A DNA stretch of 64,000 nucleotides from Phallusia mammillata (GCA_965637545.1 OZ281498.1:23808001-23872000); one strand, 5' to 3'. Counted from the stretch's first letter, positions 1-19,165 are shown. Program-made: numbers and translations. The notes: generated from the letters alone by a model not told the origin.

Positions 1-1585
1 GATCAAGTCTTTGCAATCGCTTCTGCATAGCAAAAAAAAGATAAAATGAAATGGACCACTGTATACTTGTGTATCCTAGGGCTTGTGGAATCTTAGTTTT
101 ATATTTAAACAGCAAATATGGAAAATAAAGCATCATTTTTAGGCTGAGTGATCTACATGAACCCTTTCAGGTCTGATCCCAGTATTGCACATTTGTTTAT
201 CTTATCTTCAAAAGAAATAGTTCGAGTGTAAGCTCTTCTGCAGAGTACAACTGTATCAATTTAAAAACCGTATCAATTGGTCACAAAACGGACATGAGTG
301 ATAACGATAGAACTTTTTTGTCACAAGTTGTATTGCGGATCACAGCAACTCTACAATACAAGTTCTTTACATATTTGTGCGTTTTAATCTTGCAAGGTTG
401 CCTGCGAACAAAAAATGTAATTTGCGAGTGTGCAGTAGGATAGCTTAAAAAGGGTTAGGAAAGGCATGCGTAGTGTTAACTGCAGAAACTAACTTACTAG
501 ACTAGAACGCAACTGTTCAACCAATAAAGTGTTCACAAACCAGAACCCCACACACAGTAGCTGCGGTATGCTTACTGCTGCTTATATTTACATATCATGA
601 TAATAACATCCTGGTAACGTGTTTTCGCAGCAGTTTGTATGTTTTTCCGGACATACTTGACAAGCTTTTAGTCGTTCCACGTAGAAAGAATTACTGGGAC
701 AAAATCCTGAAGAACCTCCTTTAGGACCCATGATGATTTGGGGAATGGCATTCTGAGAAAATATGTATGTTCACTTAACATCCTTCATGCCACAGTTTAT
801 TTGTTTTAGCAAGTTATTTTCGACATTAAGTACTTGATATTGGAAGAAACAACCGCAACAAAAAGCATAAATAGAAATTTATGCCAAATGACATCCTTGA
901 CAGTATAAGAAAGTTGACCTCTACAAGTTCATAGCATGTTTTGAAAAGTGTTGATAGAAATACTAAAGTTTATGTGCCACAACTAACCTCAAATTGGCAC
1001 TCTTCATTTTTCCAAACATCTTTGTCAGCCATGCTCTGGTTTAGAAAGAAAAACAGAATCATATTTCTACATTGACTTGAATGCTTTGCAAATGCTTTAT
1101 AAACTGCAAGGTTACACACATATGCTTGATGTACCGTAGCTAATCATTGCTCAGCAAAGTAAATCTGTTTAAGCTTGACTGTTTGGCAAACCTACTGAAA
1201 ATCTTATACAACAGCACACAGGTTACTACTTTGGGTGATGTATTTCCAGTCAAAAGATAGTTTTATAATGAACTGGGCTTTGTTTCCAAGCACAAAAAAC
1301 AGACATAAATAAAACAGTTACATGCCAAACATAACGTTCTAACATTGAATGCTTGTTGGTACCAGTCTGCAGCCTTGGTTTATTACAGATTTATGCTTAA
1401 AAACAGTAAGAGGATTAAATGTATGACATTATCCTGAGGAATCGCTTAAAAGAAAACGTCGGAACGTCGTTAAAAGTTGTTTTCCAAAATCGAGAAGATA
1501 AAACAAAACGTACCTGTACAAAAAGCACCAAAAAACACAAGAAAAGACCAAGAAAATCAACTCGAAAAAACATTGTTCGTTTCAT
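1..1585 (-). CDS. Cys-rich/mucin/TM receptor family member A0 (3'-partial, runs off the window); exons 1514-1585, 988-1035, 592-752, 1-22
   Basis: Hand-spliced in frame (phases 0,0,2): MKRTMFFRVDFLGLFLCFLVLFVQ|SMADKDVWKNEECQFE|NAIPQIIMGPKGGSSGFCPSNSFYVERLKACQVCPEKHTNCCENTLPGCYYHDI|SDCKDLI. Close paralog of the gene at 3823-6598. Confidence 0.8.
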
Positions 1586-3070
1586 TTGAAAACACGTTTC
1601 AGCTCTTTCGCAATAGAGAGCGACATGAAAAAAATGACGCAAAAGTTTGCTACATCCGGACCGGTGAAGCAAAGAGCATCGGCGAATATTAAAAATCAAA
1701 CCTCTGTGAAAGGTTAGGGATGTTAGGGTTGGGGTGAGGTTTTATAATAACAATAACATTTAAACTAACTTTAAAACTCAGTTCCTAACCTTAAATTTAG
1801 ATTAAAATCCTTTTCTAACTGGTTATTAAAACAACTGTGCTCTTTACGTCACTTATCGGTATTTACCAAACGTGAGTTATTACCTTAAGCTCTACTTCGT
1901 ACTGATAACGATTGAGGCTCTGGATCTTGCTCTGTGCTATTTCTATTTAAAACAAGATTACCTGAATCTAAATTCGCAACACACACATTTTCGGAAAGAA
2001 ACTAAAAAATTTAAACTATACAATATATGCAAGCGATTTCTTTTCTGGGCTAGCCCATTAGTGTTTGCACTGACCAACGGTCAAGGGCATGTTGAAATAA
2101 GCCAATAACCCACTGAAATATAACATAGAGTTTTATTGTCTATTAGCGATTTCCGGGGTGTAAAATCCACGACCCTGTGTGGTTTACGTAAAAATATTTA
2201 AAGCAGGTTAAATTGTCAGGCCAAAGTATTGTCACAAAAACACAACCTTTAATGATATGTGATAAATCTTTTGCCCCAAAGACGATGTTTTTTATTGCTC
2301 GAATGTTTCACAGTAACTTTTGTAATACCAAATCCAACGCTGTACTGTTTAATTAAGTTATGCAAACAGTGGTCGGTTCCTGTTGTATTTTATTATCTTA
2401 CTGCACTCATGAAATATAGGTTCTAGATAAAATTCTAGGACTATAATTAAAACTTTTACTAAAGGTTTCGAAAAAAATCTTTTAAAAATTTGCGAAAAAA
2501 ACGAATTTATATGTTGATCGAATAAACAACAGAATAAATATATTAGTGTAATACGTTACAAATTTGATCAATTAGGCGTAAATATAACAAAATAAATTCA
2601 GACAGATCTATTGACACGCAAAAAAAGAAATCTAAACAATACTGTCGGCAATGTAAGCAAATCATTTAGGGCAAAAATGTGTTTACATATCGGTTCTGTT
2701 TGTGTTAAAACCTATAAAGGGGAACTTTTTGCAAAGGGGATAGATCATCTGTTAAACAACCAGTTTTACACAAGTAGATGTGCAGTACTAAGCATTCATA
2801 AAACGTTAACAACCGTAAATAGTGTCCTAAATTTCATTTTCATAGATCATATATCTGTGTACGATGGCTTTCAAGTACGATATAGGTAAAGAACATCAGC
2901 AATAAACGATACTGTGTACCTCAAAAACACTTGATTTAGGAAATAGTAAAAACCAACTTGTACGCAGTGTTGTGCAATTCAGGTGCAAATTCCTTAAGAT
3001 TCGATAGCTCGAACAGGTGATAAGAAGTTGAAACACAGTATACTAGAGCACCAGCACATTTGTCAAACAC
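340..3070. repeat. Segmental duplication unit (A0 5' half plus upstream block), paralogous to about 5360-7690; its part 2230-3070 recurs at about 11095-11930
   Basis: Long, directly visible alignments of introns and intergenic DNA. The copy at about 7390 lacks roughly 180 bp (2611-2790 equivalent). Confidence 0.85.
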
Positions 3071-3822
3071 TTACCACAAAATGCATTATTATCTACACAC
3101 TAGTGCAACATCCAGTAACCTTAAAACGATTTTGTGTACGTGGATTGCAACTACACAACACACAACACTGTGCAATGGAAAAAACCACTTGATCTCCTGG
3201 CGGTAAGGGGTAAAGCAGTGTAGATGCAATAAAATAGTGTATACGAGGCATGTTACACACACAACTTTGTTCATCAACAACAAGTGAACCGTGCTTCGAT
3301 TAGGTAGTACAGCACAGAAGTAGTACAATTTGGAATTTGGAACAACACAGTCGCAATGTAAAGTGTCCTGAACTGGAATTTAAAAAACGGAAATTGTTTG
3401 AAATACACTAAAGCGGCTGATTCTCAACGCGTCTCCCAAAGGCGTGGGCAACAATAAAAACAAACAAACAAATGGACAATTGCAAAAGCCTTATATGCCT
3501 TTATCCGTACCACATAAGCAATTTGGTCAATTACAATATTCTGACTACTTGTAACATAAAATCTTAAGTAACTCACTGGTGTCAGTGTCTCAACTTAACC
3601 GAGATTTTTTTCAATCTATGAGGGCGTTTTAAAATCCGCAAGCTGTTTAAAGAAAAGTACAGCAAAGTTTAAGACACTACAAGTTAAATGTTTGATTTTT
3701 CAACATACATGATGAGATGGTAAAGCAAAATTAGTTTACTGCCAACAAAAGGGGGGATACTAGCCTTATAATTCGAAGTCAGTGTGCACTGTCCAGTCAG
3801 TGTGCACTGTCCATACTATAAC

Positions 3823-6598
3823 TTACATATAGTTTTGATAATTTGGAACCTCTATGTAAATTGGATTAACCACAGGATTTTGCTTTTTTTGCCAGGTTTT
3901 GCAACAGCGTTTTCTAATCCAGTAGTAAACCATAGCAACTAAAACCACAAGGACAGTGCCAGAAATGCAAATTATTAACACTAGTTTTCGAGTTTCATTT
4001 CCTCCACTCGAATCCGCATGTGAGGTTTTCGGTTTTGCTGTAGTTGTATTTGGAGCAACAGGTGATGTGCTTGTGTTCGGCTGCTGTAGCAATGAGATTT
4101 TAGTTATTTGGTGGAAGACGTTACTTGGCAATAAGAAATAAGTGATTTTAAAAAACGTATGAGTTCTCAAACGACCCTACAATTTTTTATTGCAACCTTA
4201 TTCAAGTACGATGTGATAACCTCAACGAGCCAACAATTTCGTATAACAGTGGTTTGTGGCTTCTGATTTGAATAGGAATCAGACAGCAGATTTGTCCGTG
4301 TAGAATCGTTTTTAAGATTACTGGGCATGAAAATAGCAATGGGAACGTATCCAAAAGTTATTGAATAAAAAATCGCAAATCAAAAAACGTTTTCCAGGGG
4401 TTGCCGACACCTGTACTACTTCTACGTTTGTTAGAATTCGTTTTTACTTGTCACGAAATCAAAGTTCAAAAATCAATTATAACCTGAGGTCATGGCTAGT
4501 ATCTAAACGTGCAGACTTCGTAGCATGAGCTAAACTGTTACTGAAAGATTTGTGATTTCAATTGTCCAAGTACAAACAGCATTAAAACGATATTTGTGTT
4601 TTTGTTTTAACTAAACTTACAGTCGATGATGTCGTCTGCGTTTCACTTGTTGTAGAACTGACAGTGGTATCTACTGTTGGGGTTGGGGTTGGTGTTGTCG
4701 AGTCTGTGATCGAAGGTGTAACGGTCGTGCTTGGTGTACCGTAGGAAGTGGTTGTGGTAAAGACAGAAGACGCGATCAGGTGTTTGCAGTGACTTCTGTA
4801 CAGCAAAAAATAAAATAAAATAGGCGACTGTATACTTCCAGAAGGCGTGTGGCATCTTAGATTTACATTTAAACAGCAAATATAAAAATTAAAGCGTTGT
4901 TATAAGCTGTCATAGTACGCCAGGCCCATTGAAGGCGTTACAGTAAATCAATAGGCCTAGCGTACGATGGCATAGTAATCAGCTTTCATAGGTCATTCCA
5001 GTATTGAATGTTTGTTGATCTTATGTTTGAATAGAGATAGATTGAGTGCGTGTCGTCTTTTCTGTGGAGTACGACCGTATCAAATCAGTGTTCTGGGAAT
5101 TGGTGACAAAAAATGATTTGAGTGAGTTCCAGTGTTTTTTTAAAGGTGTTTTGGAGGACCGAAACGGTCCCCAAAATTTCTCCAGCGGTTTCCCAAAATT
5201 TGGACTTGCAACTACATGGCTATTTTTTGGTATTTAAATGAAACACTTGCGGTCTCTTAAAACTACTTAGCGGTCACCCAAACCAAACCTTAAAAAAACG
5301 TGTATAGTGACAACATTCGAAGCTCAATTTGATCTTGATTTTTATCCCAAGCAGTAGAACGCATCACAACAACACTACACAATATTTCGTGCGTTTTAAT
5401 CATGCAAGGTTTGCCTGCGAACAATCATATAACTAGGTAGTGTGCTGTAACTTAAAAAGGTTAGGAAAGGCATGCATAGTGTCAACCGTCGATAACTACC
5501 AAACTAGAACGCGACTGTTCAACCAATAAAGTGTTCACTAACCAGAACCCACACAGTAGCTTGGGTCACTGACTGCTGCATATACTTACATATCATGACG
5601 GTGGCATCTTGGCAGCGTGTTTTCGCAGCAGTTCGTATGTTTTCTCGGACATACTTGACAAGCTTTTAGTCGTTCCACGTAGAAAGAATTACTGGGACAA
5701 AATCCTGAAAAACCTCCCTCAGGGCCCATGATGATTTTGGGTAAGGCATTCTGAGAAAATATGTTTGGTCACTAAACATTCTGGATGCAACAGAGTATTT
5801 GTTTTTTAAGGTTATTTTCAACATTAGGTACCTTATGTTGGAAGCAACAACCGCAACAAAAATGCATAAAATTTATGTTACATGCAGCCTTAACACTTTT
5901 TGAAAGATGCTTTTTACAAGTTCATAGCATGCTTTAAAGAGTTCTCATGGAAAAATAGTTTATGTACCACAACTTACTTTAAATCTGCATTCTCCCTTTT
6001 TCCAAACATCATTGTCCGCTACAACCTTGTTAAGGAAGAAAAAAAAAAAAAACAGAATCATAATATTACTTTAACTTGGCTTAATAAGTTTCATGAATTG
6101 TCAGGCTACACAACTGTGCTTGATACAGGCATAGGTAATCATTGGTCAGCAAAGTAAAATTATTTAAGCTTGAATGTTTGGCAAACCTACTGTAAATCTT
6201 GTACAACAGCACACAGGTAACTATTTTTAGGCTGATGTGTTTCCAAACAAAATATGGTTTTATAATTATATAAGCTTAGTTGCAAAAATAAGAAAAAAAC
6301 ACAGAACAAATTAAAGTTATAGATTCCAGACACAACATAATAACATTGAACGATTGTTGGTACCAGTATGCAGCTCTACGAGAGGTTTATTACGAGTTTA
6401 TGCTTAACAACATCAAGAGGGTACAAAGTATGTAATTGTCCCGAGGACACGTTTCAACTAAGACGTCGAAACGTCGTTTAAAAATGTTTTTCAAAATCAA
6501 GACAATAAAACTAAACGTACCTGTCCAAGAAGCACCAAAAAACACAAGAAAAAACCCAGAAAATCGGCTTGAAAAATCATTTTGAATTTTTTAATCAT
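3823..6598 (-). CDS. Receptor family member A (complete); exons 6521-6598, 5978-6025, 5590-5750, 4621-4795, 3823-4083
   Basis: All GT-AG and in frame: signal MIKKFKMIFQADFLGFFLCFLVLLGQ; VVADNDVWKKGECRFK; Cys exon ...FCPSNSFYVERLKACQVCPRKHTNCCENTLPRCHRHDI; S/T-rich stalk; TM LVLIICISGTVLVVLVAMVYYW; tail RKRCCKTWQKKQNPVVNPIYIEVPNYQNYM. Confidence 0.85.
5130..5303. repeat. Dispersed ~170-bp repeat, with an inverted copy at about 29565-29740
   Basis: Reverse-complement match, e.g. ttagcggtcacccaaaccaaacctt vs aaggtttggtttgggtgaccgctaa. Confidence 0.8.
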
Positions 6599-7009
6599 TT
6601 TAGAACCTGTTTCTTTAAAGCGTGATGCAACCACATGACATGGTAAAAATGAAAAAATGACACTATGAGGCGCTATACCCAACATTGTTGTGAAAACAGA
6701 AACAATATTACTTTAATCTAAATTTGCAACACATTTTTGCGAAGAAGCTAAAAAATTTTCAACCAAAAAATATATGCAAGCGTTTTTTTTTCTGGGTTAG
6801 CTCATTAGGGTTTACAGTGATCAACGGTCGACGGCATGTTTAAGTAGGCCAGACCCGTAGAGTACTGAAATACAAAAGAGTTTCATTGTTTATTATAATA
6901 AGCGACTTTTTTTCGCTTTAGCGACTTTTTTCCGGTGCGTAAAATCCACTACCCCGTGTAGTTTACTTAAAAGATTGAAATCAGGCAAAATTTCCAGGCC
7001 AAAGTATTG

Positions 7010-8260
7010 TCACAAAAACACAACCTTTAATGATATGTGATAAATCTTTTGCCCCAAAGACGACGCTTTTTATTGCTCGAATGTTTCACAGTAATTTTTG
7101 TGATACCAAATCCAACGTCGTACTGTTTAATTAAGTAATGGAAACAGTGGTTGGAAACCTGCATGTTGTATTTTATTATCTTACTGCACTCATAAATATC
7201 GGTTCTAAATAAAATTCTGGGATCGTGATTAAAACTTTTACTAGGTTTCACAACAAATCTTTAAAAAAAATTGCGAAAAAAACGAATTTATATGTTGATC
7301 GAATAAACAACAGAATAAATATTTTAGTGTAATACGTTACAAATTTGATCAATTAGACGTAAATATCACAAAATAAATTCAGAAAGATCTAGCATTCATA
7401 AAACGTTAACAACCGTAAATAGTGTCCTAAATTTCATTCTCATTGATTATATATCTGTGTACGTTGTTTTTCAAGTACAATATAGGTAAAGAAAGTCAGC
7501 AACAAACTAAACTGTGTATACATTAAAAACACTTGATTTACGAGATAGTAAAAACCAACGTGTACGCAGTGTTGTGCAATTCAAATTCTGCAAATTCCTT
7601 AAGATTCGATAGCTCGAACTAGTGATAAGAAGTTGAAACACAGTATATTAGCACCAGTACAATTGTCAAAAACACTTACCAAAAAATGAAAACAGCTCGA
7701 AGGCAGAATGAAACATGTTTGCTGGAAAAAATGTTAGCAAACACAGCTTTACACTTTTTAAACAAAGTTTAGAATGACTTTTAATCGTACTAACTTTTAT
7801 AACGACATTCCTAACTATATTTGAACGACCAATTAGCTTTTTGTTTAGAAAAATAAAACGTTTTTGTTACAGCACAAGACACATTACTTAACAATTTGCT
7901 CAAAGACGAAATTTGCTCCAACGTGAAAAAGTGTCAAAACAATTTAGGAATAAGTGCTTTTCCGCGTTGAACAGGTCACGATACCCTAACTTGTCTAGTG
8001 AAGTCGGTATTGCAAAAGACAGTTCGTCATAAACTTTTACAAGACCAGACAAACACTTTAAAACGCAAAAAAAGGAATTATTGGTGGCGTCGATGGATTT
8101 TAAACACTCCGAGATGGTGCTGGATAGTTTTTAGCGTTGACAACACATGTGTACTTGCAAGTTTTAAAACAATTTGGTAATGCAACTGCTCAACCATATC
8201 GCAAGTTGTTTGGCCTTTTGGGGTGTACAGCACATTACAATTAAAATTAGTAGAATTATT
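7010..8260. repeat. Duplicated block (B 3' flank plus last exon), paralogous to about 11095-12510
   Basis: Near-identical runs, e.g. gctcaaagacgaaatttgctccaacgtgaaaaa at about 7897 and 12147. Confidence 0.85.
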
Positions 8261-9968
8261 GCTATGCCTAAAGGAATTTTTAAATTTCCATCCATGATTT
8301 CGTGCAGCATTGGCGGTGGTGAAACCATTACAGGTCGGGTTTCGTTAGATGTTGAGTCATTACTGGGATTTTCTGTCTTTCGCACATTCTGCAACAAAGC
8401 AAGTATTTGCCCCATTGATCAAACAGACAAAAATATGTAGCATAAGGTATGCCTGTTTTAGCTGTACAAAATTTTGTGATAAAGAGCTTCAAAAGTTAAA
8501 ATCACATTAATTACCATGTACTAATAACAATCACTGCAATTTTGTTGGTGTTTGACAAAAGACTTACAACTGTAGACGTCGTCGGCGTTTCACTTGTTTT
8601 AGTATTGATGGTTGGATCTACAATAGGGGTTTCAACTTTTGGTTGTTGTGCTGTAGATTCCGTGGTTGTTGTGCTTTTTGTGGGTTTTACTTCAGGTTCG
8701 GTTGTCGATATGTCACCATCCGTTGGTGGTGGATATTTTTCCGCACATAAGCTTTTACTACAAAGCAAATGTTTGTTGCGAATTTTGGTCAAGAACAAAA
8801 GTACTTATGAAGAAACATTTAGCCGTTAATTTTGGGCTAATTCATGTTTCATACCAGTTTCTGTTTTACGCCTACAAGCAGTTTTAAACTTTTTTTTTAG
8901 TAAGTAGTAAAAAGTAACTTAGTAAATCAATTGATTTAGCGTTAAGAGTGTATTCTGATCGGACTGCAAGTAGGTAGAAAAATATCGGTGAAAAAGCAGT
9001 TATGTAGTCATCATGTCCGCGAATGTTTTGACGTTTACCGAACGTAAGAACGTCAATACGTCAGGAACAGAATACAAGTATACAGGAATAGAATACGGAA
9101 ACCCTGCTAAATTGGCTCGGAGCTGCGTTTAGTTGTAATTAGACAACATATTATTGATAAAACATATGGGTAATGAACAACAGCTACCTACTTGGCTATG
9201 AAGCATGTAAGCAATCCATTTCTGCAGCAATTGGAATGTATGTTGGGACATGATTTGCAATCAGGATCGACATACATTTCATGTGGGGCACATAAATCGG
9301 TAGTGGTATATATTGCTCCGTTTTTGTCTATTCTTTTTATTGTTGTAATATCCTAAAAAATGAGCATTCTTACTCCTGATATGTATGTTTTGTAAAAGCG
9401 ACCAGATTTTATCTTGTGTGGTGTCAAGATTTACAATTTTATTTTTCCAAAATAAACAAAATACTTTAATAGCCCAAGCAAAAACTTTAATGACAAAAAT
9501 ACAACTTTTAGAAAAACAATTTGTTTCCTAATTAGCCTAAACATTGACAAATTGGAAAAAATGCAAGTAGATAGGTAAAAATTTTGTCTAAGTCACTGTA
9601 AGCATGAATGGTCCAGTTTTTGTCAAATATATAGATGTGAATACTAAACTTACTTGAAATGTACACGTTCCATTTTCCCACTTTACTGCATTCGCCTATA
9701 AACAGTTATCAAATAAGCAATTAAAGACAAGTTTCACAGACACTTATAAGCTTGCACAAACTTTTCAAAAAGAAATTGTACCATTGTGGCAAAAAATGCC
9801 TTTACCATTTTCCACTTTTTATTAGTAGTCTAAAGATATAGGGCTTATAACTTGTGAGAAAAAAATTACACCAAGAACACTCGTAAAAAAATTACTTACC
9901 TTATCCACAGGTTCAGCCATCAACCCCAAAGTAATAACTAATATCCAGAATATTATGAGCCTTTTCAT
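8164..9968 (-). CDS. Receptor family member B (complete, short tail); exons 9900-9968, 9654-9695, 9192-9352, 8568-8757, 8164-8388
   Basis: MKRLIIFWILVITLGLMAEPVDK|ANAVKWENGTCTFQ|DITTIKRIDKNGAIYTTTDLCAPHEMYVDPDCKSCPNIHSNCCRNGLLTCFIAN|KSLCAEKYPPP, then T-rich stalk|...TM IPLGIAIILLILIVMCC, then TPQKAKQLAIWLSSCITKLF*. Exon lengths are consistent with phases 0,0,2,0. Confidence 0.85.
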
Positions 9969-10695
9969 ATTTGATCTATAATTAGCTCGCTATTGTTTTT
10001 AAATTAGCCTGTATGTTCGTTTGCTAACTCTTATTAACTGTGTTGTTCGACGTTTTAATTTTTTGCAGCTTCAAGTTAGGTACCTGGCAGTACGTTTTGT
10101 CTGTAGACTGTAGCTTAGCTGATGTAATACCCAGAAAGTTCTCCATGCCCGGGGAAACCACCGGACGGGACAGTAGCGGGGTATGCGTTACGGGTTACAG
10201 CACTGTGCCGGTATTTCTATCAACGTACCAAGATAGGCGTTCGGAAAAAAGCTTTGGTTTGTGGGAACTTTATGCAGCGTTCTAAAATTGTTTTTTGCAT
10301 GGTTTTAAAAACGTTAAGAATTTTGACATGCCTTCACTACTCCGATAGTATCTTGTATGCGTAAAATAATCTCCTACAACACTACAAAAGCAATGTTTAA
10401 TTACCAAGAGGGTTGCTTACAGGCATAGGCTAATAGAAAGAAAATATGGCTTGTCTGCAAAACTACTTAGTGATCCGACGTTTCAACGTAAGGTCATCTG
10501 GCGATTTATGTGTCATTTTGCCGTGACGTCCGCTTTATTATGGCGTCAAAGGCATACCTACATAGAGTATGAAATACAAAAATAATGAAACCGCATCAAG
10601 TTTGTACAATTTCTACCGAGTATTTTCGTTTAATTCAATTGCTTCAAACTACTCGTCATTAGGTGATGTAATATCGATTTTTGAAAATATTAGGT
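8780..10695. repeat. B 5' half and promoter duplicated at about 17830-19905 (D)
   Basis: Exons 1-3, introns and upstream region align (e.g. gggaaaccaccggacgggacagta; actactcgtcattaggtgat). Homology ends at about 10695/19905. Confidence 0.85.
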
Positions 10696-11095
10696 ACCGT
10701 ACTTACTTTATTGAGAGCCACGGCTTATATTGTTTTTTAGCTGCCGTTTGTGCGGCTTATAAACGAGGGCGGCTTACAATCGAGGGCGGCTTTCATTTTA
10801 ATATTATACCGAAATCATTGCTACACTCCAACGTTATAAATTATTTGGGCTTCAAAACATGTATGCATGTACAGATTATACGTCGATATACGTTCCGTTG
10901 GGTACAGTTATCAACATAACCAACAGATATAAGCAAATAGCCATGCTATGTAACAACAGAAAGATGTATTAAGAAACAATAGTATCAAATATTCAAGCGT
11001 GCGGCTTACAATCGAGGGCGGCTTACATTATTTTGTTAACACCTCAACATGCGGCTTACAATCGAGGGCTTACAAAATACCTTCTTTAGTTATTG
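10695..11095. mobile_element. Truncated pogo/Tigger-like non-autonomous element
   Basis: Starts with TACCGTA and contains repeated gcggcttacaatcgaggg motifs (about 10770, 11001, 11051), as seen in pogo/Tigger-type MITE subtermini. No second TIR was found. Confidence 0.45.
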
Positions 11096-12312
11096 ACATG
11101 TGATAAATCTTTTGCCCAGAAACGATGTTTTTTATCGGTCCAATGTTTCACAGTAATGTTTGTGATACCAAATCCAACGTTGTTCAATTGTTTAATTATG
11201 TGATGCGAATAGTCGTTGGAATCATCTCGTATTTTATTACCTTGCTGCACTCACGAAACATCATTTCTAAATGAAATTCTGGGATCATAATTAAAACTTT
11301 TAATAAAACTTTCAAAACAAATCTTCGACAAAAAAGTTTGCGAAAAAGAAGTGTAGATCAAATAAAGAACAAAATAAATATTTTACTGTAATACGTTACA
11401 AATTTGATCAATCAGACGTAAATATAACAAAATAAATTCAGACAGATCTATTGACACGCAAAAAAGAAAACAATACTGTCGGCAATGTAAGCAAATCATT
11501 TAGGGCAAAAATGTGTTTACATATCGGTTCTATTTGTGTTAAAACCTATAAAGGGGAACTTTTTGCAAAGGGGATAGATCATCGGTTAAACAACCAGTTT
11601 TACACAAGTAGATGTGCAGTACTAAGCATTCATAAAACGTTAACAACCGTAAATAGTGTCCTAAATTTCATTTTCATTGATCATATATCTGTGTACGTTG
11701 TTTTTCAAGTACGATATAGGTAAAGAACATCAGCAATAAACGATACTGTGTACCTTAAAAACACTTGATTTACGAGATAGTAAAAACTAACGTGTACGTA
11801 GTGTTGTGCAATTCAGGTATGTCACGGCAATTCGAGTGCAAATTCCTTAAGATTCGATAGCTCGAACAGAAGTTAAAACACAGTATATCAGACTACTAGA
11901 GCACCAGTACAATTGTCAAAAACACATGAAAACAGCTCGCAGGCAGAATGAAACATGTTTGCTCATGTTTGTAAGTGTTAGCAAACACAGCTTTACACTT
12001 TTTAAACTTTACACACTTTAAGAGTTTTAAACTACTTGTAATCGTACTGACTTATATGGTTTTCCTGACATAATTTGAACGATCAATCAGCCTTTTTTAG
12101 AAAAAAAACGTATTAATTATAGCACAAGACATTTTTCTTAATGATTTGCTCAAAGACGAAATTTGCTCCAACGTGAAAAAGTTTTAAAACAATTTAGGGA
12201 TAACTGAAGTGCTTTTCCACGTTAAACAGGTCACAATACCCTAACTTGTCTAGTGAATTCGGTATTGCAGAAGACAGTTCGCCATAAACTTTTACAAGCC
12301 ACAGCAAACACT

Positions 12313-12560
12313 TTAAAAAGGTAAAACAGGAATTATTAAGGCATCGATGGATTTTAAATTCTCTGATACGGTACTGGATATATTTGAGCGTTGACAACAC
12401 ATGCGTACTTGCACTTTTTGAAACAATTTGGTAATGCAACTGCTCAACCATATCGCAAGTTGTTTGGCCTTTTGTGGTGTACAGTACATTACAATCAAAA
12501 TTAGTAGGACAATTATTACCATGTTGAATAGAATTTTTAACGTCCATCTATAGCGTCGAC
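12313..12560 (-). pseudogene. Orphan, frameshifted B-type TM/tail exon immediately downstream of member C
   Basis: Aligns with the B last exon (IILLILIVMCCTPQKAKQLAIWLSSCITKLF vs IIVLLILIVMYCTPQKAKQLAIWLSSCITKLFQKVQ...). It has a 1-nt deletion just before the TM and no recognisable B-type stalk start. Confidence 0.7.
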
Positions 12561-12705
12561 GGTGGTATTTATATGCGCTACTACTAGCAAAACCAGTAAT
12601 GATTTATAATCTGCGTTCGTAATTAAAAAAAAAAAAAACTTTAAAAATCGCCTTTTTTCGTATTTTGCACAAAACGAGACTGAATGTTAAAGGTTAAACT
12701 ATAGT

Positions 12706-15078
12706 TTATTGGTTAACCTCTCTGTAAGTTCTGTTGGACCCAGTATTTTGCCGTTTTTTAATCCACTGCCTGCAGAAGTAAACCACAATAGCTGAAACCA
12801 CAAGCACAGCAGTGCCAGGAATGCAAATTATTAACACTAGTTTTCCAGTTTCAATTCCTCCACTCGAATCCGCATGTGAGGTTTTCGGTTTTGCTGTAGT
12901 TGTATTTGGAGCAACAGGTGATGTGCTTCTATTCGGCTGATGCTGCACAAATTAGATTTCAATGACTTTTCTCGAAAAGCTTTTTCGGTGCCTATGTCGA
13001 AGATGTATGGGTTTTTCCCCACATTTTTTAATTTTACGGATATCGGTAAACACTGGTAGTTACTTCATTTGATAAATGGTTTAGTGCTGCATAATAAGAA
13101 ATTTTTAGGGTGGTTCGACGTTTCAGTTTGGGAATTACCCTAACAACGTTTGTGTGACAGCACAGAAATATTTCTTTTTGCATACAACCTGTTTGGAAAT
13201 TGAAGTAGGTTCAACATTTGAAGTCTGAACCTGCCTTTCAGTAGTTGCTGTCATCGGAGTGGTGGTTGTCATACGTGGCGATGGTTTTGTAACCGGTGTT
13301 GATGTGGTGGTTGAAAACATACGGAACAAGTTTTTGCAATCTGCTTGACTAAGAACAACAGTTTTATCAATCAACTGTCATACATTTACTTTGAATTAAA
13401 TTAAAGAAAATTAAAAAAAATTAATTTGCAACCTCTAGAATTTGTGCCTCGGTGCCGTGGTGATGATTTAATATTCATAAAACCTTAGCCAACACCAACT
13501 AACCTGTATTTTTGTTAATATTAAAATCAGCTGGACAAACCACTATTGCACATAAAAAAAGGTTGATTTTCCAACCCCTGCTGGAAAGGAATGCATAGAT
13601 GCGAAAATCACTTTAACACATCAAACTATGCAACTGCATTTTAACACATCTTTTTTGGACAATAATGCATGACTGTTTGATATCAGTGAAGCATTTAACT
13701 TCAATAATACAAAAAACATTCAAAGTCTCTTAGACATGATATATTTACATGGCGTTGCGAGAAATTTCTAATGCACAAATCAGTGGCCACCGACCACCAA
13801 CAAATCCACCTAAAGTGTTAGACGTTACTTGGACTCGCTGGTAAAATAACTTTATTGATTTGTGGAATGGCTGGGATATAGAGCAAAGTGGTTGAACAAC
13901 ATAGTCTATCGGGCAATACAAATAACTTGTGGTAATTTTGGAACGGAGAGAATGTAATGTGCTCCTTGTACGAAATGTTTATGTTAGTATTTGTTGGTCA
14001 CTGTTGGAGTAATTTCACCAGCTTGTGTAAAACCTGTGTCTGGGCAAATACTTAATCTATCTAAGTGCGCTGAGGACCACTGTGAGCAACATCAGATGTG
14101 AAAGCTATAACCAGCCACAAGTTAATATATACGGCATAAAGTCTTATGTACGCTATAAAAAGTTGAGAGAAGTGCGAAGGCGCTTTAAACCCTTTGCGAA
14201 ACCTCACTAACACAGATACCAAATACATTTGCTTACCTGCAAAAACATCTTAGAAGTGTGTTATTGCAACAGTTCGTGTGAGGCAATGGGCACGTATGAC
14301 ATGTATTGGATGTGAAAAATTGGTCTGGGTTGCAGTAACCATGAACATACGATCCGTCGTCTTGTCTAATTAACTTCCCTTTTCCCTTTTGTAACAAACC
14401 TCGTTTACTTTTAAGCGTTTTTGGCTGTTTCTACAGTAGGCATTTGTTCTTATTAGCCAAGATAAAAGTGATATTATTATAAAAGTTAAAAAATAATTAG
14501 CGGTATAATGAAGTTTTTTATAAACATTTTTTCACTACCGGAATGAACACAAATTGGAATTACCACGAACTGGCATGTTCCGTTATTCCGTGTAATCCGA
14601 CGTTCCTGTTTCGACTGCCAATAAAAAAAAAACATTCCTCTATAATATATAATATAATTGTCTACTAATCTTTCCATACTTCATGAACAAAATCAACACA
14701 GTTACACCATGTTAACTTACAGAAACATTGCAATTTGTATACTTCCTTTTCACACGTTTTAGCTTCTGCAAAACAAACTAAATATGAATCTGTTTATAGT
14801 TTGAACTTTAAAGAATAGATTGTAAAAAAAAAACAATTGATATGTAAATAAATGTATTCTAAATTAGTTATTTATTGTAATAACGATTTTGCATGCTTGT
14901 GTTTTATTCCGAATTTAAAATTACCTTAAAGATAAGTTTAAAATAAAGAAAATTGTAAACTCAAACACTAATGATCATGATAACTTACCTTATATGTTTT
15001 ACCGCTCCCCACTACCACCATCATCAACAAGAACAGTAGCATCATATTCACAACGCAGGAGAACATAAACCGTTTCAT
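12706..15078 (-). CDS. Receptor family member C (complete); exons 14989-15078, 14721-14765, 14237-14430, 13186-13348, 12706-12942
   Basis: MKRFMFSCVVNMMLLFLLMMVVVGAVKHIR|KLKRVKRKYTNCNVS|KQPKTLKSKRGLLQKGKGKLIRQDDGSYVHGYCNPDQFFTSNTCHTCPLPHTNCCNNTLLRCFCS|QADCKNLF, then T-rich stalk|...TM LVLIICIPGTAVLVVSAIVVYF, then CRQWIKKRQNTGSNRTYREVNQ*. Confidence 0.82.
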
Positions 15079-15559
15079 ACTTTGCTGCTAAGGCACTGGA
15101 TTAAAACGTTATATAACTCTGCAACGATTTGCCATTATTTGAACTTTTGTTAATTTGATTGTGTTTGATAGGAATTGCTACAATTTAAACAGTTTGTCCC
15201 AGGGGTGGAAAGTTCCTTGGAATGCAAGGTTTTTTCTCATACAGTTTGTTAAAAAAAAATTATTTTATTATTACACTTATTTTTAATCAAATGTTGTGAT
15301 TTTGTAGTCCCAAAACGCAACCTACAAATACGCACCTGACTGCTTTTTGATTACTTATTACATGACCTGGGACAAAACACTATAACTTCTACTATTGCTT
15401 TTAAATAAATGATTTGCTGTCTGTGTTTTTGATTTTGTACCAGTCGACTCATCCACACATTTGCCAACTGTTTTAAGTTTTGATAAATGTGTGTCACAAG
15501 TTGTGATCCACTACATGGTTGGCCGACTAGCTTGCCTATCTTAAATATTTTGCAATTCT

Positions 15560-16563
15560 AAACCACATCTCTCGATACAACTTATAAACCGGCAAAATTC
15601 GAAACAATTACATCTTAACACAACGTTAAATTCCTTGCTATTCCTACAGCAGTACGGTTACCAGTGCATTACATCAGGGACTTGTACATGAGTATCACAT
15701 GGACCTATCACTGTCCGTTTTATGTTTCGCGTCACAGCACAAAGGCGATGTGACACGAACAATGAAATTTTCCTAAGGATTCCAAATAATCAGACGCGAC
15801 CCCCTCAATCAGACGCGATTTCCAAATAATCAGACGCGTTACAAGGTGACATCATCCACATTTATATAGGATTCAACGACACAACAAATGGTTGGTTTCT
15901 AAACCACATAAGCCCACATAAATGGTGTAGGGTTTTATAAGCAACAGTAAAAAAACTTGCAAAAAAGTCAGGACATGGATATTACTGGTGGTCAGTAATC
16001 CCAGGTGGGGATAAATAATATGATGAAAACAAAAACGTTATCATGGCAAAGCAATCATTTTTATGAATATTGTAGGCGTATATGGGTTTAACCTAAATCT
16101 TATAGTTAGTAGTTACATGTGCTTTAAAGATACAAACTGCCCTTAAAGTTGGCTAACCTGAAGAAAGACATAAAACATACACTGGACTTTTTTTGACATG
16201 TCTTTGAGTCAAAAACAAACCGCTTGACGGTTTCCAGTGATCAGCTTTGTCGGTCAACAACACCTATAATTAACCAGCCCACGTGGTCCGAAAGGCATTT
16301 GTACAAATGTGCCACTTTGGTATGTTTACACTTGCCATTTTTCCAAACTCGACTTGATATCAACCAGACAAAGCCTTCTGCTTTCAAACAACGTGATGAA
16401 CTTATTGCGTATTTATTGCGGCGTGATGAACCCAGAAGAAACGCCTGACTGATCGTTGTGGTAAAAGTTGTCTACGTGTCGTCTAAGATAATGACCTACT
16501 TGTTGTTACTACTCTTAAGGCTTGTAGCATAGAGATGACACGAACACAGCAAAGACGCTTTAT
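15560..16563 (-). pseudogene. Probable decayed family member between C and D (relics of exons 1-3)
   Basis: Three relics in the correct order: an exon-1-like segment 16500-16563 (ATA-AAG-CGT-CTT vs family ATG-AAA-AGG-CTY, donor GTAGGT); an exon-2-like VWKNGKCKHT at about 16315-16350; and an exon-3-like segment after a TTAG acceptor at about 15772 containing YCCRNSKEFNVVLRCNC, with stops and frameshifts. Confidence 0.5.
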
Positions 16564-16889
16564 GTAACTGTGTTATTTACTTTTATTAGACATTAACCAG
16601 ATACATTTATCAAAACGTATGATGGTGATGCGTTTTGTAATGGTTTTTGTATATGATTCTTATTCGATCGGAAAAAAGCCTGTGTGCAGAAGAATATTAA
16701 CAACCTTTCTATTAACAACCTTCACAACGACATTTTTAGCTTCGGTTAATCATGGGTTGAATTTAACACCTAAAATGTGAAAGCCAGTATGAAGAGTTTA
16801 CTTTTTTGAACTAAAACCACATCCAATGTGAAAAGACTTGTTTCGAGGTGATTTAACACAAAAACTAAAGGCAGTTCATATGTTTTTCG

Positions 16890-19165
16890 CTAAACTGAGT
16901 CAGTAGTGTAAATTGACTCATCATCAGGTGCAGTTCTGTCGTTGTCGAGCATTTCCACGATTTCCTGTGGGTCTGATGATTGTAGTGAATCTTCGGTATT
17001 GTTCTCATTAGCTTGTAGCCTTGCCTTTAATCCCTCCATACACTTATACCGTTTGTTTCGACACAAGCATGCCAGCAAGAACAGACATATAGCGACGATT
17101 ACAACGAGGATGACAATAAGGATGACCTCGTCGTTTGGCCAAGTGGTTGTAACTGGGTTCACAATGGGACCAAGTGTTGTTTCCACCTGTACAGACTGTG
17201 ATATAAATTTAGGTGCATTTAAGTTTGTTGGCCTTAAGAGTGCTTAAAATCACTGACACGTAACTTTTTTGAAATAAGTTCGGGGTTAAGTAGGATAAAA
17301 TTATTTTTCTACATCTTAAGAATGTTTAAATCTCTATTACATAATTTTTTGTACACTTATTTTTCTTATTTCATGATTTTGAACGAGTATTGAATACTTT
17401 GCAAAGAACCTTAATGTTAAAAAAACACACAACTAAATATCAGTGTATTCAGTACAAAAAAATTAGCAATCTTCTTTTAGCTGCCCGAGTGCATGTTCTA
17501 TATTTACTAGTGGTTTTGCAAAAGCTGAACCCCATTTAATACTGAATATTTCGGTTTTCTGATAAAAGGTTTTATTAGGGTTTGACACGAGACTTACAGG
17601 CGAAGAAGGCGATGGCGCTTTCGTTGTTGTCGTTGAACTTGTGGTTGTATCCACTTTTGGGGTTTCGACCGTTGGGGCTGTCACTGGTGTTGTGGACGCT
17701 TCGGTTGTTGTGCTTGGTGTGGGTTTTATGTCAGGTTCGGGTGTTGGTGAGACCCCAGTGGGTGGCGGATACTCCGTAGCGCAAGAGCTTCTACAAAAAA
17801 GTGCTTAAATATTGGTTAATAACAACGGTGTTTATTGGTAAGGACTAGAGCCGCCCGTAAAGGCTTGCAGTTCATGCGTTTTACAACATTTTCTGTTTTA
17901 TGCCTACAAGCAGGAGTATTAGCACTTTATTGTTAACTGAAAGTCATTAAGCTGAAATATTCATTATCATTAACAACATATTCGTCGACCGCGAGTGTTA
18001 GATTAGACCGGGAGTACCAAAAAGACTGTTAAAAAAGTTGAGAACCTCTAGGTTAAAGGCTTTCGGCATTCTTCTCGCGCTATGCCTGGTTGCTCATGCA
18101 AAACATCGACATCTAGCTTTTCGTGTGTATTTCGTTTTAGCTTTAGCTTCACTATTTCATTGATCATCTGGTCTAGGTCGAACCAAATAAAAAAAATCCA
18201 ACCGGTTTAGCGAATGTGGGTTTAACATATTCCGGTTTTGTCGACATTTATTGTCCAAAAATCTAAAAACATTAAATCCTGAGCATGAATGCAAGGTAAC
18301 CTACAAATTTGGCTTTAATACGGCAACATTATTAAAATAGAATCGAATAAACTCAAAAGCTACCAACTTGTAGAAGTAACATTTATCCAATCCATTTCTA
18401 CAGCAATTGGAAAGCCCTTTGGTACATGGTGTGCATCCAGGATCAGTGTACAACTCATCTGGGCCACATAAATTAGTTGTGCTTTTTATTCCGTTTTCGT
18501 CTTTTCTTTTTATAGTTGTAATTTCCTGAAAAAAAACGCATTCTTGCATGTAAAAACAACCATCAGATTTTATCTTGTGGTATTCATGATTTACACTTTT
18601 ATCTTTTACAAAACATACAAAATAATTGAATAGCCCAAGCAAACAGGTTAACCATGACAAAAATAATACAATTGTTAGAAAAACAGTTTTGTTTCTTAAT
18701 TAGCTTCACAAATTGTTGCATTTTTTTGAAAGGAAATATGTAATTATTCATGTAAAACATTTGTCTAATGTCTCTGTTAGCATGAATGAATCAGTTTTTG
18801 TTAAAAAAATAGAACTTATGAATGCAAAACTTACCACAAATGTACAAGTTCCATTTTCCCACTTTTCTTTATGCTCCTAACGAAACAAAATAACGAATTA
18901 TTTAAAAACAAATTAAACAGACAATTATAAGCATACACAAACGTTTTACAACAAATTGTAAGTTACCATAATGGTAAAAACTGCTTTCAATATTTTTCCT
19001 ATATTATTGGTATAACTTATATTTCGAGAAAAATAAAAAAATTAGAAACAAAAATTATGTTTTTCATGAACAGCCTTAACAAAGATAATTTACCTTATCT
19101 TCTGGTTTAGCCATCATCCCGACATTAATAAGTAATATCCAGAATACCATAATAAGCCTTTTCAT
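16890..19165 (-). CDS. Receptor family member D (complete); exons 19094-19165, 18835-18876, 18368-18525, 17598-17790, 16890-17186
   Basis: MKRLIMVFWILLINVGMMAKPEDK|EHKEKWENGTCTFV|EITTIKRKDENGIKSTTNLCGPDELYTDPGCTPCTKGLSNCCRNGLDKCYFYK|SSCATEYPPP, then P/T-rich stalk|...TM VILIVILVVIVAICLFLLACLC; acidic tail ending PQEIVEMLDNDRTAPDDESIYTTDSV*. Confidence 0.87.

What the first reader, a model, noticed from the sequence alone, without database searches (positions are those of the whole stretch)
1..19165. Tandem array of an unrecognised Cys-knob/mucin-stalk type-I receptor family with a TNFR (BCMA/TACI-like) start
Seen: five paralogs, none visible as a whole in the ORF track. The four complete ones share a 5-exon plan (phases 0,0,2,0): signal | one-Cys exon (usually W-x3/4-C-x-F) | C-x10/12-C-x2-C-x6-CC-x6-C | C plus S/T/P stalk | TM plus tail. 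The Cys are fixed while intervening residues diverge strongly. Established: the single CRD of human BCMA begins CSQNEYFDSLLHACIPC, the same C-x12-C-x2-C spacing with an aromatic pair as CPSNSFYVERLKACQVC in A/A0. However, the DxL ligand motif is not conserved and the CC doublet is not typical of TNFRs. Inference: a lineage-specific, rapidly diversifying cell-surface recognition family (immune, allorecognition or fertilisation receptors) that presents a small disulfide knob on a mucin stalk. I recognise no described family with this exact pattern.
Basis: partly seen in the sequence, partly recalled or inferred. Interest (0 to 1): 0.9.

Follow-up and report, generated by a model that had tools for sequence, protein, structure and literature searches.

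The report
Sea-squirt cysteine-knob membrane glycoprotein array
Five neighbouring, apparently intact genes in a sea-squirt-type genome encode small cell-surface proteins with a disulfide-rich head on a sugar-bearing stalk; no public catalogue searched holds them, the head only partly resembles a TNF-receptor module, and neither expression nor function has been shown.

Summary
Window 1-19165 carries five minus-strand paralogs (A is cut by the window start; A0, B, C and D are complete, 228-256 aa). All share one five-exon plan with intron phases 0,0,2,0 and 19/19 GT-AG introns. The plan is signal peptide, one-Cys micro-exon, 6-Cys exon (C-x10/12-C-x2-C-x6-CC-x6-C), Cys plus S/T/P stalk, then TM and tail. 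The Cys pattern occurs 5 times against 0 in 100 shuffles.

The genes look selected: open frames, dN/dS of 0.34-0.63 in exon 3, and only in-frame indels in exons. Transcription could not be tested, because no RNA run held the stretch.

No sequence method names the head:
- Pfam found nothing.
- PDB sequence searches gave no credible match.
- An exhaustive HMMER profile search of 1.84 billion representatives gave one spurious hit.

A modest AlphaFold model of the 40-aa core (pLDDT 62) draws BCMA, Fn14, Grindelwald, TACI and 4-1BB to the top of Foldseek. All hits are sub-threshold and cover only the first hairpin. The CC-containing second half, the DxL motif and the tails do not fit TNFRs.

Verdict: a real, unannotated, probably lineage-restricted type-I membrane glycoprotein family with a TNFR-like first hairpin. 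TNFR membership is unproven. The scan has two other notes on this same stretch and none on other DNA.

The parts
1..1585 (-). Gene A, 3' end cut by the window start. Exons 1585-1514 (signal), 1035-988 (one-Cys exon, VWKNEECQF), 752-592 (6-Cys exon), 22-1 (start of the Cys + stalk exon).
   Evidence: Model and GT-AG check. The locus is 78% identical to A0 with introns included.
3823..6598 (-). Gene A0, complete, 240 aa. Exons 6598-6521, 6025-5978, 5750-5590, 4795-4621, 4083-3823. The tail ends ...NPIYIEVPNYQNYM.
8164..9968 (-). Gene B, complete, 228 aa. Exons 9968-9900, 9695-9654, 9352-9192, 8757-8568, 8388-8164. The tail is short: CCTPQKAKQLAIWLSSCITKLF.
12706..15078 (-). Gene C, complete, 243 aa. 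Exons 15078-14989, 14614-14564, 14430-14237, 13348-13189, 12942-12706. Exon 5 is of the A0 type.
   Evidence: Exon 5 is 88% identical to A0 exon 5 over 187 nt, while the rest of the two genes does not align at the DNA level.
16890..19165 (-). Gene D, complete, 256 aa. Exons 19165-19094, 18876-18835, 18525-18368, 17790-17598, 17195-16890. The acidic tail ends in TDSV.
592..752 (-). Exon 3 of A: C-x12-C-x2-C-x6-CC-x6-C core.
5590..5750 (-). Exon 3 of A0: C-x12-C-x2-C-x6-CC-x6-C core. This is the sequence modelled in A2.
9192..9352 (-). Exon 3 of B: C-x10-C-x2-C-x6-CC-x6-C core.
14237..14430 (-). Exon 3 of C: C-x10-C-x2-C-x6-CC-x6-C-x-C core with a longer basic lead.
18368..18525 (-). Exon 3 of D: C-x10-C-x2-C-x6-CC-x6-C core.
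12421..12540 (-). Truncated relic of a B-type exon 5 (TM + tail) about 170 nt downstream of gene C's stop. It has no acceptor and lacks the first ~35 codons.
   Evidence: tblastn gives 96% identity over 23 aa. Region 11625-12540 is 82% identical to 7391-8283.

Best explanation
The stretch is a tandem array of at least five real protein-coding genes for small (about 230-260 aa) type-I membrane glycoproteins. The family is not annotated in the libraries searched and is probably restricted to ascidians or a sub-lineage.

Each protein has these parts, from outside to inside:
- A cleavable signal peptide.
- A compact head locked by about four disulfides. One Cys comes from a 14-17-residue micro-exon, six from exon 3 and one from the start of exon 4.
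- A 50-65-residue Ser/Thr/Pro stalk that should be heavily O-glycosylated and hold the head above the glycocalyx.
- One TM helix with juxtamembrane Cys (candidate palmitoylation sites).
- A short cytoplasmic tail that differs between copies: NPxY plus YxN in A0, YxxV in C, an acidic tail ending in the class-I PDZ ligand TDSV in D, and a short tail in B.

The first half of the exon-3 core most likely folds as a TNFR-type 'A1' beta-hairpin (C-P-x-N/D-x-aromatic-aromatic ... C-x2-C). The second half (C-x6-CC-x6-C, with invariant N-C-C-x-N-x-L) is a module not seen in canonical TNFR domains.

The inferred mode of action is a set of surface binding proteins that present one kind of small head and couple it to different intracellular adaptors.

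The array grew by segmental tandem duplication, with exchange of the 3' TM/tail exon between copies.

Shown here: gene structure, conservation pattern, topology features and the duplication history. Inferred: disulfide pairing, glycosylation, the partial TNFR-like fold, and any binding or signalling role.
For: Evidence that the copies are real genes:
- Five copies carry the Cys pattern against 0 in 100 shuffles.
- All have the same five-exon plan, with 19/19 GT-AG introns and 10 GTAAGT donors.
- All four complete copies have open frames, a signal-like N-terminus, one TM segment and a 47-67% S/T/P exon 4.

Evidence for selection on the coding sequence:
- dN/dS is 0.34 (A/A0) and 0.63 (B/D) in exon 3.
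- Exon 3 is 89% identical against 78% for introns in A/A0. Exons show only in-frame indels, while introns have 52-55 gap columns.
- Between subgroups no DNA similarity survives, yet C x6, N-CC, N and L remain invariant.
- The ten listed exonic variants in two DNA runs (4 synonymous, 6 non-synonymous) break no frame and no Cys.

Evidence for the partial TNFR-like fold:
- The AlphaFold core model has pLDDT 62, and 76 over residues 11-20, with a hairpin at 9-12/17-20.
- 30 of the top 50 Foldseek rows are TNFR-superfamily chains: BCMA, Fn14, Grindelwald, TACI, 4-1BB and DR4.
- The whole-core VIA matches are Meckelin, mGluR and Elapor1 segments (Z 2.1-2.5); that these are TNFR-like Cys-rich repeats is my own knowledge, not a tool result.

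Duplication and exon exchange are documented.
Against: - There is no transcript evidence. The only holders of the stretch are two genomic DNA runs, and twelve small runs guessed to be RNA from the same species label hold next to none of its words.
- Exon 2 is no better conserved than introns in A/A0 (71% against 78%). Constraint is weak overall.
- The structural models are of low to modest confidence (pLDDT 52 and 62). They were built from five sequences and lack the exon-2 and exon-4 cysteines.
- All fold matches are statistically insignificant.
- The tail motifs are short and could arise by chance.
- Function is inferred from architecture alone.
Confidence: 0.6

Rival explanations
1. [quoted passage not shown] On this reading they bind trimeric TNFSF ligands of the tunicate and signal through TRAF-type adaptors.
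For: - The spacing C-x10/12-C-x2-C with an aromatic pair equals a TNFR A1 module.
- Foldseek ranks 1-11 for the core model are BCMA, followed by Fn14, Grindelwald, TACI, 4-1BB and DR4.
- D's tail contains PQEIVE, which fits the TRAF6 consensus P-x-E-x-x-(aromatic/acidic). The sequence is and the consensus is from my own knowledge.
- Tunicates are reported to have up to 14 TNFSF ligand genes with frequent lineage-specific duplication (PMC12843592). That paper does not analyse tunicate receptor genes, so their repertoire is open as far as I read.
Against: - Pfam shows no match to TNFR_c6, BCMA, TACI or BAFF-R models, even at E<=10.
- No TNFR chain appears in PDB sequence searches at E<=10.
- The fold hits cover only 15-21 residues with E>0.8, and no BCMA chain reaches Z 2 over the whole core.
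- The second module, C-x6-CC-x6-C, is unlike the B2/C2/D2 modules.
- The DxL ligand-contact motif is absent: V-E-R in A/A0, and the hairpin is two residues shorter in B, C and D.
- No Pfam family passes its cut-off in the TM/tail exons, so no death domain was detected. Three of the four tails lack any TRAF-type motif.
- Two extra cysteines lie outside the 6-Cys core.
Confidence: 0.15
2. They are passive membrane mucins of the sialomucin type, like CD164/endolyn, the CD34 family or TMEM154. Their main job would be glycocalyx building, anti-adhesion or lubrication on an epithelium. The Cys head would be structural rather than a specific binding site.
For: - The stalk exon is 47-67% S/T/P.
- The TM/tail exons of A0 and C give weak Pfam matches to TMEM154 (E 9e-5 and 1.5e-4), and that of A0 to CD34_antigen (E 0.019).
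- Coding constraint is weak.
Against: - All those Pfam matches are below the gathering cut-offs and fall on the S/T-rich and TM stretch, so they are probably compositional.
- The stalk is short (50-65 residues).
- The most conserved part of the protein is the Cys head, with an invariant N-CC-x-N-x-L motif. A/A0 exon 3 has the lowest well-estimated dN/dS.
- The tails carry different docking-type motifs.
Confidence: 0.15
3. The copies are not functional genes. They would be decaying duplicates or chance exon-like stretches that are never expressed.
For: - No RNA support could be obtained.
- No protein of this kind is present in 1.84 billion representatives, not even from this species.
- Exon and intron identity differ only modestly.
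Against: - Four of four complete copies keep open frames across five exons each.
- 19/19 introns have canonical splice sites.
- dN/dS is below 1 and exons carry only in-frame indels.
- The cysteines are invariant between subgroups whose introns no longer align.
- The one true relic, the B-type exon-5 fragment at 12421-12540, looks different: it is truncated and has lost its stop.
Confidence: 0.08

Closest known systems
Single-CRD TNF receptors: BCMA (TNFRSF17), TACI CRD2, Fn14 (TNFRSF12A), Drosophila Grindelwald
   Same: - Small membrane proteins with one small Cys-rich head.
- The first module has the same spacing (C-x10/12-C-x2-C), with N/D and two aromatics at the start of a beta-hairpin.
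- They are the top, though sub-threshold, Foldseek matches of the core model: 15-21 residues, rmsd 0.3-1.5 A, 31-37% identity.
   Different: - There is no significant sequence or profile match.
- The second module is C-x6-CC-x6-C, not a B2/C2/D2 module.
- Two further Cys come from neighbouring exons.
- The DxL motif is absent.
- These proteins have a signal peptide and a long mucin stalk, whereas BCMA, TACI and BAFF-R lack a signal peptide (own knowledge).
- No consistent TRAF motif is present.
- No BCMA chain reaches Z 2 over the whole core.
Cys-rich segments of Elapor1, Meckelin (TMEM67) and metabotropic glutamate receptors; that they are TNFR-like / ephrin-receptor-like repeats is my own knowledge
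   Same: These are the only chains that align over the whole 40-residue core model: 35-39 residues aligned, rmsd 2.4-2.8 A. They share the generic C-P-x-x-x-aromatic ... C-x2-C-P hairpin-stack style.
   Different: Z is only 2.1-2.5 with 13-17% identity, which is not significant. Those proteins carry arrays of repeats inside large ectodomains, not a single head on a mucin stalk.
Membrane sialomucins (CD164/endolyn, CD34 family) and TMEM154
   Same: They share the type-I topology, the S/T/P-rich O-glycosylation stalk next to the membrane and short tails with tyrosine motifs. Pfam gives weak hits on the stalk/TM exon.
   Different: All hits are below the Pfam cut-offs. The head's Cys framework does not match those families, and there is no Pfam hit on the head.
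TNFR-like death-receptor array noted by this scan elsewhere in the same genome (s1-358908)
   Same: It is in the same genome. By that note it is also a tandem array of diverged receptors whose TNFR-type outer domain is missed by standard models.
   Different: That array is reported to have death domains, and these proteins have none detected. I could not read its sequence, so no comparison was made.

Membership tests
TNF receptor superfamily (CRD: Pfam TNFR_c6 PF00020; BCMA-Tall_bind, TACI-CRD2, BaffR-Tall_bind) | Significant match of the ectodomain to a TNFR CRD profile | tested here: not met
   hmmscan against Pfam-A at E<=10 on all five exon-3 peptides, both as exact exons and as longer open frames, returned 0 families.
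TNF receptor superfamily | Detectable sequence similarity to a solved TNFR ectodomain | tested here: not met
   hmmsearch with profiles A1 and A2 and phmmer with the A0 core against 177,635 PDB sequences at E<=10 gave no TNFR. The single hit was a glutaredoxin-related protein at E 0.51.
TNF receptor superfamily | A1 module: one-disulfide beta-hairpin, C-x10..15-C-x2-C with aromatic residues | tested here: inconclusive
   - The spacing and the aromatic pair are present in all five copies.
- The AlphaFold core model has a hairpin at 9-12/17-20 with pLDDT about 76.
- BCMA is at Foldseek ranks 1-11, but with E 0.8-3.3 over only 17-21 residues.
- The model rests on five sequences and is not independent of the motif.
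TNF receptor superfamily | Second module with canonical two-disulfide spacing (B2, C2 or D2) completing a 6-Cys CRD | tested here: not met
   Here the spacing is C-x6-CC-x6-C, with an invariant CC doublet. No BCMA chain reaches Z 2 when the whole core is aligned.
BCMA/TACI/BAFF-R subgroup | DxL motif at the hairpin tip that contacts BAFF/APRIL | tested here: not met
   The corresponding residues are V-E-R in A and A0. B, C and D have a hairpin two residues shorter with D-P-G, D-P-D or S-N-T. The position of the motif in BCMA is from my own knowledge.
TNF receptor superfamily | Cytoplasmic death domain or TRAF-binding motif | tested here: inconclusive
   No Pfam family passes its cut-off in the TM/tail exons, so no death domain was detected. 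Only D has a P-x-E-x-x-acidic string (PQEIVE), and A0, B and C have none (sequences). Short motifs of this kind are weak evidence either way.
TNF receptor superfamily | Binds a trimeric TNFSF ligand | not testable with these tools
   This needs recombinant ectodomains and the species' TNFSF ligands.
Membrane sialomucins / TMEM154 / CD34 family | Profile match above the curated cut-off | tested here: not met
   TMEM154 scores 22.1-22.8 bits against a cut-off of 30.3. CD34_antigen scores 15.4 bits against 26.3. The matches lie on the stalk and TM stretch only.
Membrane sialomucins (as an architecture, not a homology family) | S/T/P-rich extracellular stalk next to a single TM | tested here: met
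   Exon 4 is 47-67% S+T+P with 20-34 Ser/Thr, followed by one TM segment.
PSI (plexin-semaphorin-integrin) and somatomedin-B domains (considered because of C-x2-C-x6-C and CC-x6-C spacing recalled from memory) | Profile or fold match | tested here: not met
   There is no Pfam hit at E<=10. No PSI or SMB chain appears among the Foldseek or VIA matches of either model. The models are of modest quality, so this is weak exclusion.

The most novel reading that the evidence does not exclude
The array is a hidden clade of minimal, single-CRD TNF receptors in ascidians: an A1 hairpin plus a new CC-type second module, mounted on a mucin stalk. Standard models miss it. It would supply part of the missing receptor side for the recently described large and fast-changing tunicate TNFSF ligand repertoire (PMC12843592). 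Different copies would wire one head type to different adaptors (PDZ, PTB/SH2, TRAF6-like).
Probability: 0.15. Interest if true: 0.7.

Novelty: new variant of a known kind. Interest (0 to 1): 0.4.

Why it matters
If these genes are expressed, they add an unannotated surface-protein family to an ascidian genome. Ascidians are the closest invertebrate relatives of vertebrates.

The head begins like the smallest TNF receptors but ends in a different disulfide module. It is therefore either a very diverged branch of TNFR-like domains or an independent small fold. Either result would be useful for tracing how minimal Cys-rich receptor heads evolve.

The array also shows mosaic evolution cleanly. 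The same head exons are combined with exchanged TM/tail exons, and a discarded tail exon is still visible beside gene C.

The practical importance is moderate. Lineage-specific Cys-rich, mucin-stalked membrane proteins are common in invertebrate genomes, and nothing here yet ties this family to immunity, allorecognition or fertilisation.

Tried and rejected
- The search for homologous proteins with the D exon-3 open frame (region 59-110): no candidate. The length filter of 73-231 aa would have admitted a B-like protein.
- Exhaustive HMMER profile search of 1.84 billion representatives: the single hit, P0001, is a Cys-free 1314-aa repeat protein whose score is summed over 20 weak stretches. I rejected it as spurious. 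Caveat: a 51-position profile needs roughly 40 bits or more in a library this size, so relatives at or below about 40% identity could be missed.
- Pfam on heads, stalks and TM/tail exons: nothing above cut-off.
- PDB sequence searches, three in all: no credible match, only a glutaredoxin-related protein at E 0.51.
- AlphaFold on the whole of D exon 3: pLDDT 51.7. Its Foldseek list is noise, with HER2/3/4 and 4-1BB at E 6-10.
- RNA evidence: the look-up of sequencing runs listed only two holders, which laid reads show to be genomic. Two runs guessed to be RNA gave nothing.
- The spliced full-length proteins and the spliced 8-Cys module (exons 2-4) have no reference. I therefore did not send them to any search or folding tool and analysed them only inside scripts.
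- Positive-selection reading: rejected on pairwise dN/dS below 1. Site-wise tests were not possible with five sequences.
- WAP, Ly6/uPAR three-finger, EGF, granulin and Shisa-type Cys patterns: considered from memory and dropped, because the order and spacing of cysteines do not fit and no tool supported them.
- PolyA-signal scan downstream of the stop codons: uninformative.

Full report
**What is there**

A six-frame scan of the 64-kb window for C-x8..14-C-x2-C-x5..8-CC-x5..8-C finds five matches. All are on the minus strand within 1-19165. One hundred shuffles of the window gave none.

Around each match I reconstructed a gene from the DNA. Four genes are complete: D 19165-16890, C 15078-12706, B 9968-8164 and A0 6598-3823. 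One, A (1585-1), is cut by the window start after the first 22 nt of its fourth exon.

Every copy has the same plan:
- Exon 1 encodes a signal peptide (69-90 nt).
- Exon 2 is a 42-51-nt micro-exon with one Cys. It reads W-x4-C-x-F in A, A0, B and D, and C-x-F without the W in C.
- Exon 3 (158-194 nt) carries six Cys.
- Exon 4 starts with a Cys and continues as an S/T/P-rich stretch.
- Exon 5 holds the TM segment and tail.

Intron phases are 0,0,2,0 throughout. All 19 introns are GT-AG, ten donors are exactly GTAAGT, and the acceptors follow pyrimidine-rich tracts.

**Protein features**

The complete proteins are 228-256 aa. Each has an N-terminal hydrophobic segment after a basic start. Each also has one strong TM segment (Kyte-Doolittle mean 2.8-3.8 over 19 residues) followed by basic residues.

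All four have Cys at the cytoplasmic edge of the TM. Exon 4 is 47-67% S+T+P. B, C and D keep an N-G-T sequon directly before the exon-2 Cys.

The ectodomain has eight Cys, or nine in C. In the exon-3 core the invariant positions are the six Cys plus N-CC-x-N-x-L.

The tails are unrelated to one another. A0 ends in ...NPIYIEVPNYQNYM. C ends in ...RTYREVNQ. D has a 55-residue acidic tail ending in TDSV. B has 20 residues.

**Are these real genes?**

Transcription could not be tested. The look-up of sequencing runs found only two holders. Laid on 13180-19170, these cover introns and exons alike, so they are genomic DNA. Two same-species runs guessed to be RNA gave nothing.

The indirect evidence is good:
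- All four complete copies are open across five exons.
- Pairwise dN/dS is below 1. In exon 3 it is 0.34 for A/A0 and 0.63 for B/D.
- In the young pair A/A0, exon 3 is 89% identical against 78% for introns.
- Exons carry only in-frame indels, against 52-55 gap columns in the aligned introns.
- Between the three subgroups (A/A0, B/D, C) no DNA similarity survives outside one exchanged exon, yet the Cys framework and the N-CC-x-N-x-L motif persist.
- Ten exonic variants listed in the two DNA runs are 4 synonymous and 6 non-synonymous. None breaks a frame or a Cys.

Constraint is nevertheless weak. A/A0 exon 2 is no better conserved than the introns. There is no sign of dN/dS above 1.

**How the array evolved**

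- A and A0 are collinear at 78% with introns included.
- B and D are 69% identical over 1.6 kb, including 730 nt upstream of the ATG.
- The intergenic flanks 2249-3070, 7027-8283 and 11090-12540 are mutually 82-85% identical.
- Exon 5 of C is 88% identical to exon 5 of A0 (dS 0.33), while the remaining exons of these two genes are saturated.
- About 170 nt downstream of C's stop lies a truncated B-type exon 5, 96% identical over 23 aa.

So C once had a B-type 3' end and acquired an A0-type TM/tail exon. This agrees with the scan's separate notes on this stretch (s1-405511, s1-405570).

**What is the head?**

Sequence methods are silent:
- Pfam gives nothing at E<=10 on any head exon.
- PDB sequence searches with two profiles and one sequence return no credible match; the single hit was a glutaredoxin-related protein at E 0.51.
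- A word-based search found nothing.
- An exhaustive HMMER profile search of 1.84 billion representatives returned only one hit, a Cys-free repeat protein that I take as spurious.

The window's own proteins are not in that library either. A 51-position profile cannot see relatives much below about 40% identity in a library of that size. 'No relatives' therefore means no close ones.

For structure, only contiguous window sequence could be submitted. The models therefore lack the exon-2 and exon-4 cysteines.

The whole of D exon 3 gave pLDDT 51.7 and meaningless fold matches.

The 40-residue A0 core gave pLDDT 62.2, rising to 76 over residues 11-20, with a beta-hairpin between the first two Cys. 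Foldseek against the PDB finds nothing significant. Even so, ranks 1-11 are human BCMA (E 0.8-3.3, 17-21 residues, rmsd 0.3-1.5 A, 33-37% identity). Of the top 50 rows, 30 are TNFR-superfamily chains: BCMA, Fn14, Grindelwald, TACI, 4-1BB and DR4.

The BCMA-type matches (BCMA, Fn14, Grindelwald, TACI) cover only the first hairpin; the longer 4-1BB alignments are equally sub-threshold. In the VIA re-alignment no BCMA chain reaches Z 2. The only chains that align over the whole core are segments of Meckelin, Elapor1 and mGluR, at Z 2.1-2.5. From my own knowledge these are Cys-rich regions with TNFR-like or ephrin-receptor-like repeats.

**TNFR membership**

Met or compatible: the A1-type spacing and the aromatic pair.

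Not met:
- Any profile or sequence match.
- A canonical second module. Here the spacing is C-x6-CC-x6-C.
- The DxL ligand-contact motif.

Inconclusive: the cytoplasmic test. No death domain was detected in the tails. Only D has a TRAF6-like string (PQEIVE), which could be chance.

I therefore do not file the family under TNFRSF. I describe the head as starting with a TNFR-like hairpin and ending in an undescribed CC module.

**Most likely function**

By architecture, these are cell-surface binding proteins that hold a small disulfide-locked head on an O-glycosylated stalk. They couple it to copy-specific cytoplasmic docking motifs: NPxY/YxN, YxxV and a PDZ ligand. This is inference.

I rate a true TNFSF-receptor role at about 0.15, a passive sialomucin role at about 0.15 and non-functionality at about 0.08. 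Nothing tested here supports the immune, allorecognition or fertilisation reading specifically.

**Context**

Other notes of this scan name the genome as the ascidian Phallusia mammillata. I did not verify this. The window does contain a connexin fragment, which fits a chordate.

Beside the array lie a hAT transposon, NOX-type oxidase exons and, by eye, DEAH-helicase exons. None of these suggests a function for the array.

A 2026 paper reports up to 14 TNFSF ligand genes in some tunicates, with frequent lineage-specific duplication, and does not analyse tunicate receptors (PMC12843592). That is the setting in which the TNFR reading would matter.

**Limits**

The spliced proteins and the spliced 8-Cys module have no reference, so they were left out of all search and folding tools and analysed only in scripts.

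Noticed in passing
window 12421-12540 (-), within 11625-12540: A truncated relic of a B-type TM/tail exon sits about 170 nt downstream of gene C's stop codon. It is 96% identical to B's tail over 23 aa. It lacks the first ~35 codons and the acceptor, and its stop codon is lost.
   Followed up: partly
window 3920-4100 and 12773-12959 (-): Exon 5 of A0 and exon 5 of C are 88% identical over 187 nt (dS 0.33), while all other exons of the two genes are saturated. This points to exchange or conversion of the TM/tail exon between non-sister paralogs.
   Followed up: yes
window 16890-17060, 3823-3920, 12706-12790, 8164-8230 (-): - All four tails have Cys at the TM/cytosol boundary, which are candidate palmitoylation sites.
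- D ends in TDSV, a class-I PDZ ligand, and contains PQEIVE, which fits the TRAF6 consensus.
- A0 has NPIY and YQN.
- C has YREV.
These are motif readings only.
   Followed up: no
window 13980-14179: Contig word depth in the two DNA runs jumps to about 12,200 and 3,100, against about 250 and 80 elsewhere, and several contigs break here. This indicates a high-copy repeat inside intron 3 of gene C.
   Followed up: no
window 5216-5298 and 29569-29651: An 83-bp segment is 98.8% identical in inverted orientation between intron 3 of A0 and a distant site. It is probably a small mobile element.
   Followed up: no
window 22889-24697 (-): A hAT-type transposon lies here. One open frame has a BED zinc finger (E 8e-8) and a DUF659 match below its Pfam cut-off; the next has the hAT C-terminal dimerisation domain (E 2e-7). 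The two frames are adjacent but separate, so the transposase may be interrupted.
   Followed up: partly
window 61597-62840 (-): These exons carry the ferric-reductase-type FAD-binding (E 7.5e-9) and NAD-binding (E 7.5e-8) domains, indicating a NOX/DUOX-type oxidase gene.
   Followed up: partly
window 26289-35697 (+): Open stretches carry DEAH-box helicase motifs read by eye ([16 protein letters not shown]). Pfam gave no hit on three short pieces at E<=0.001.
   Followed up: partly
window 41646-41921 (-): This is a connexin fragment (Pfam Connexin, E 3.7e-5, below the cut-off). It fits the scan's separate note on a connexin at 40440-44426.
   Followed up: partly
window 14786-14827: Both DNA runs carry contigs that skip 40 bases here (a single T stands in their place) in intron 1 of gene C, at about half of the local depth. 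It looks like an allelic deletion.
   Followed up: no
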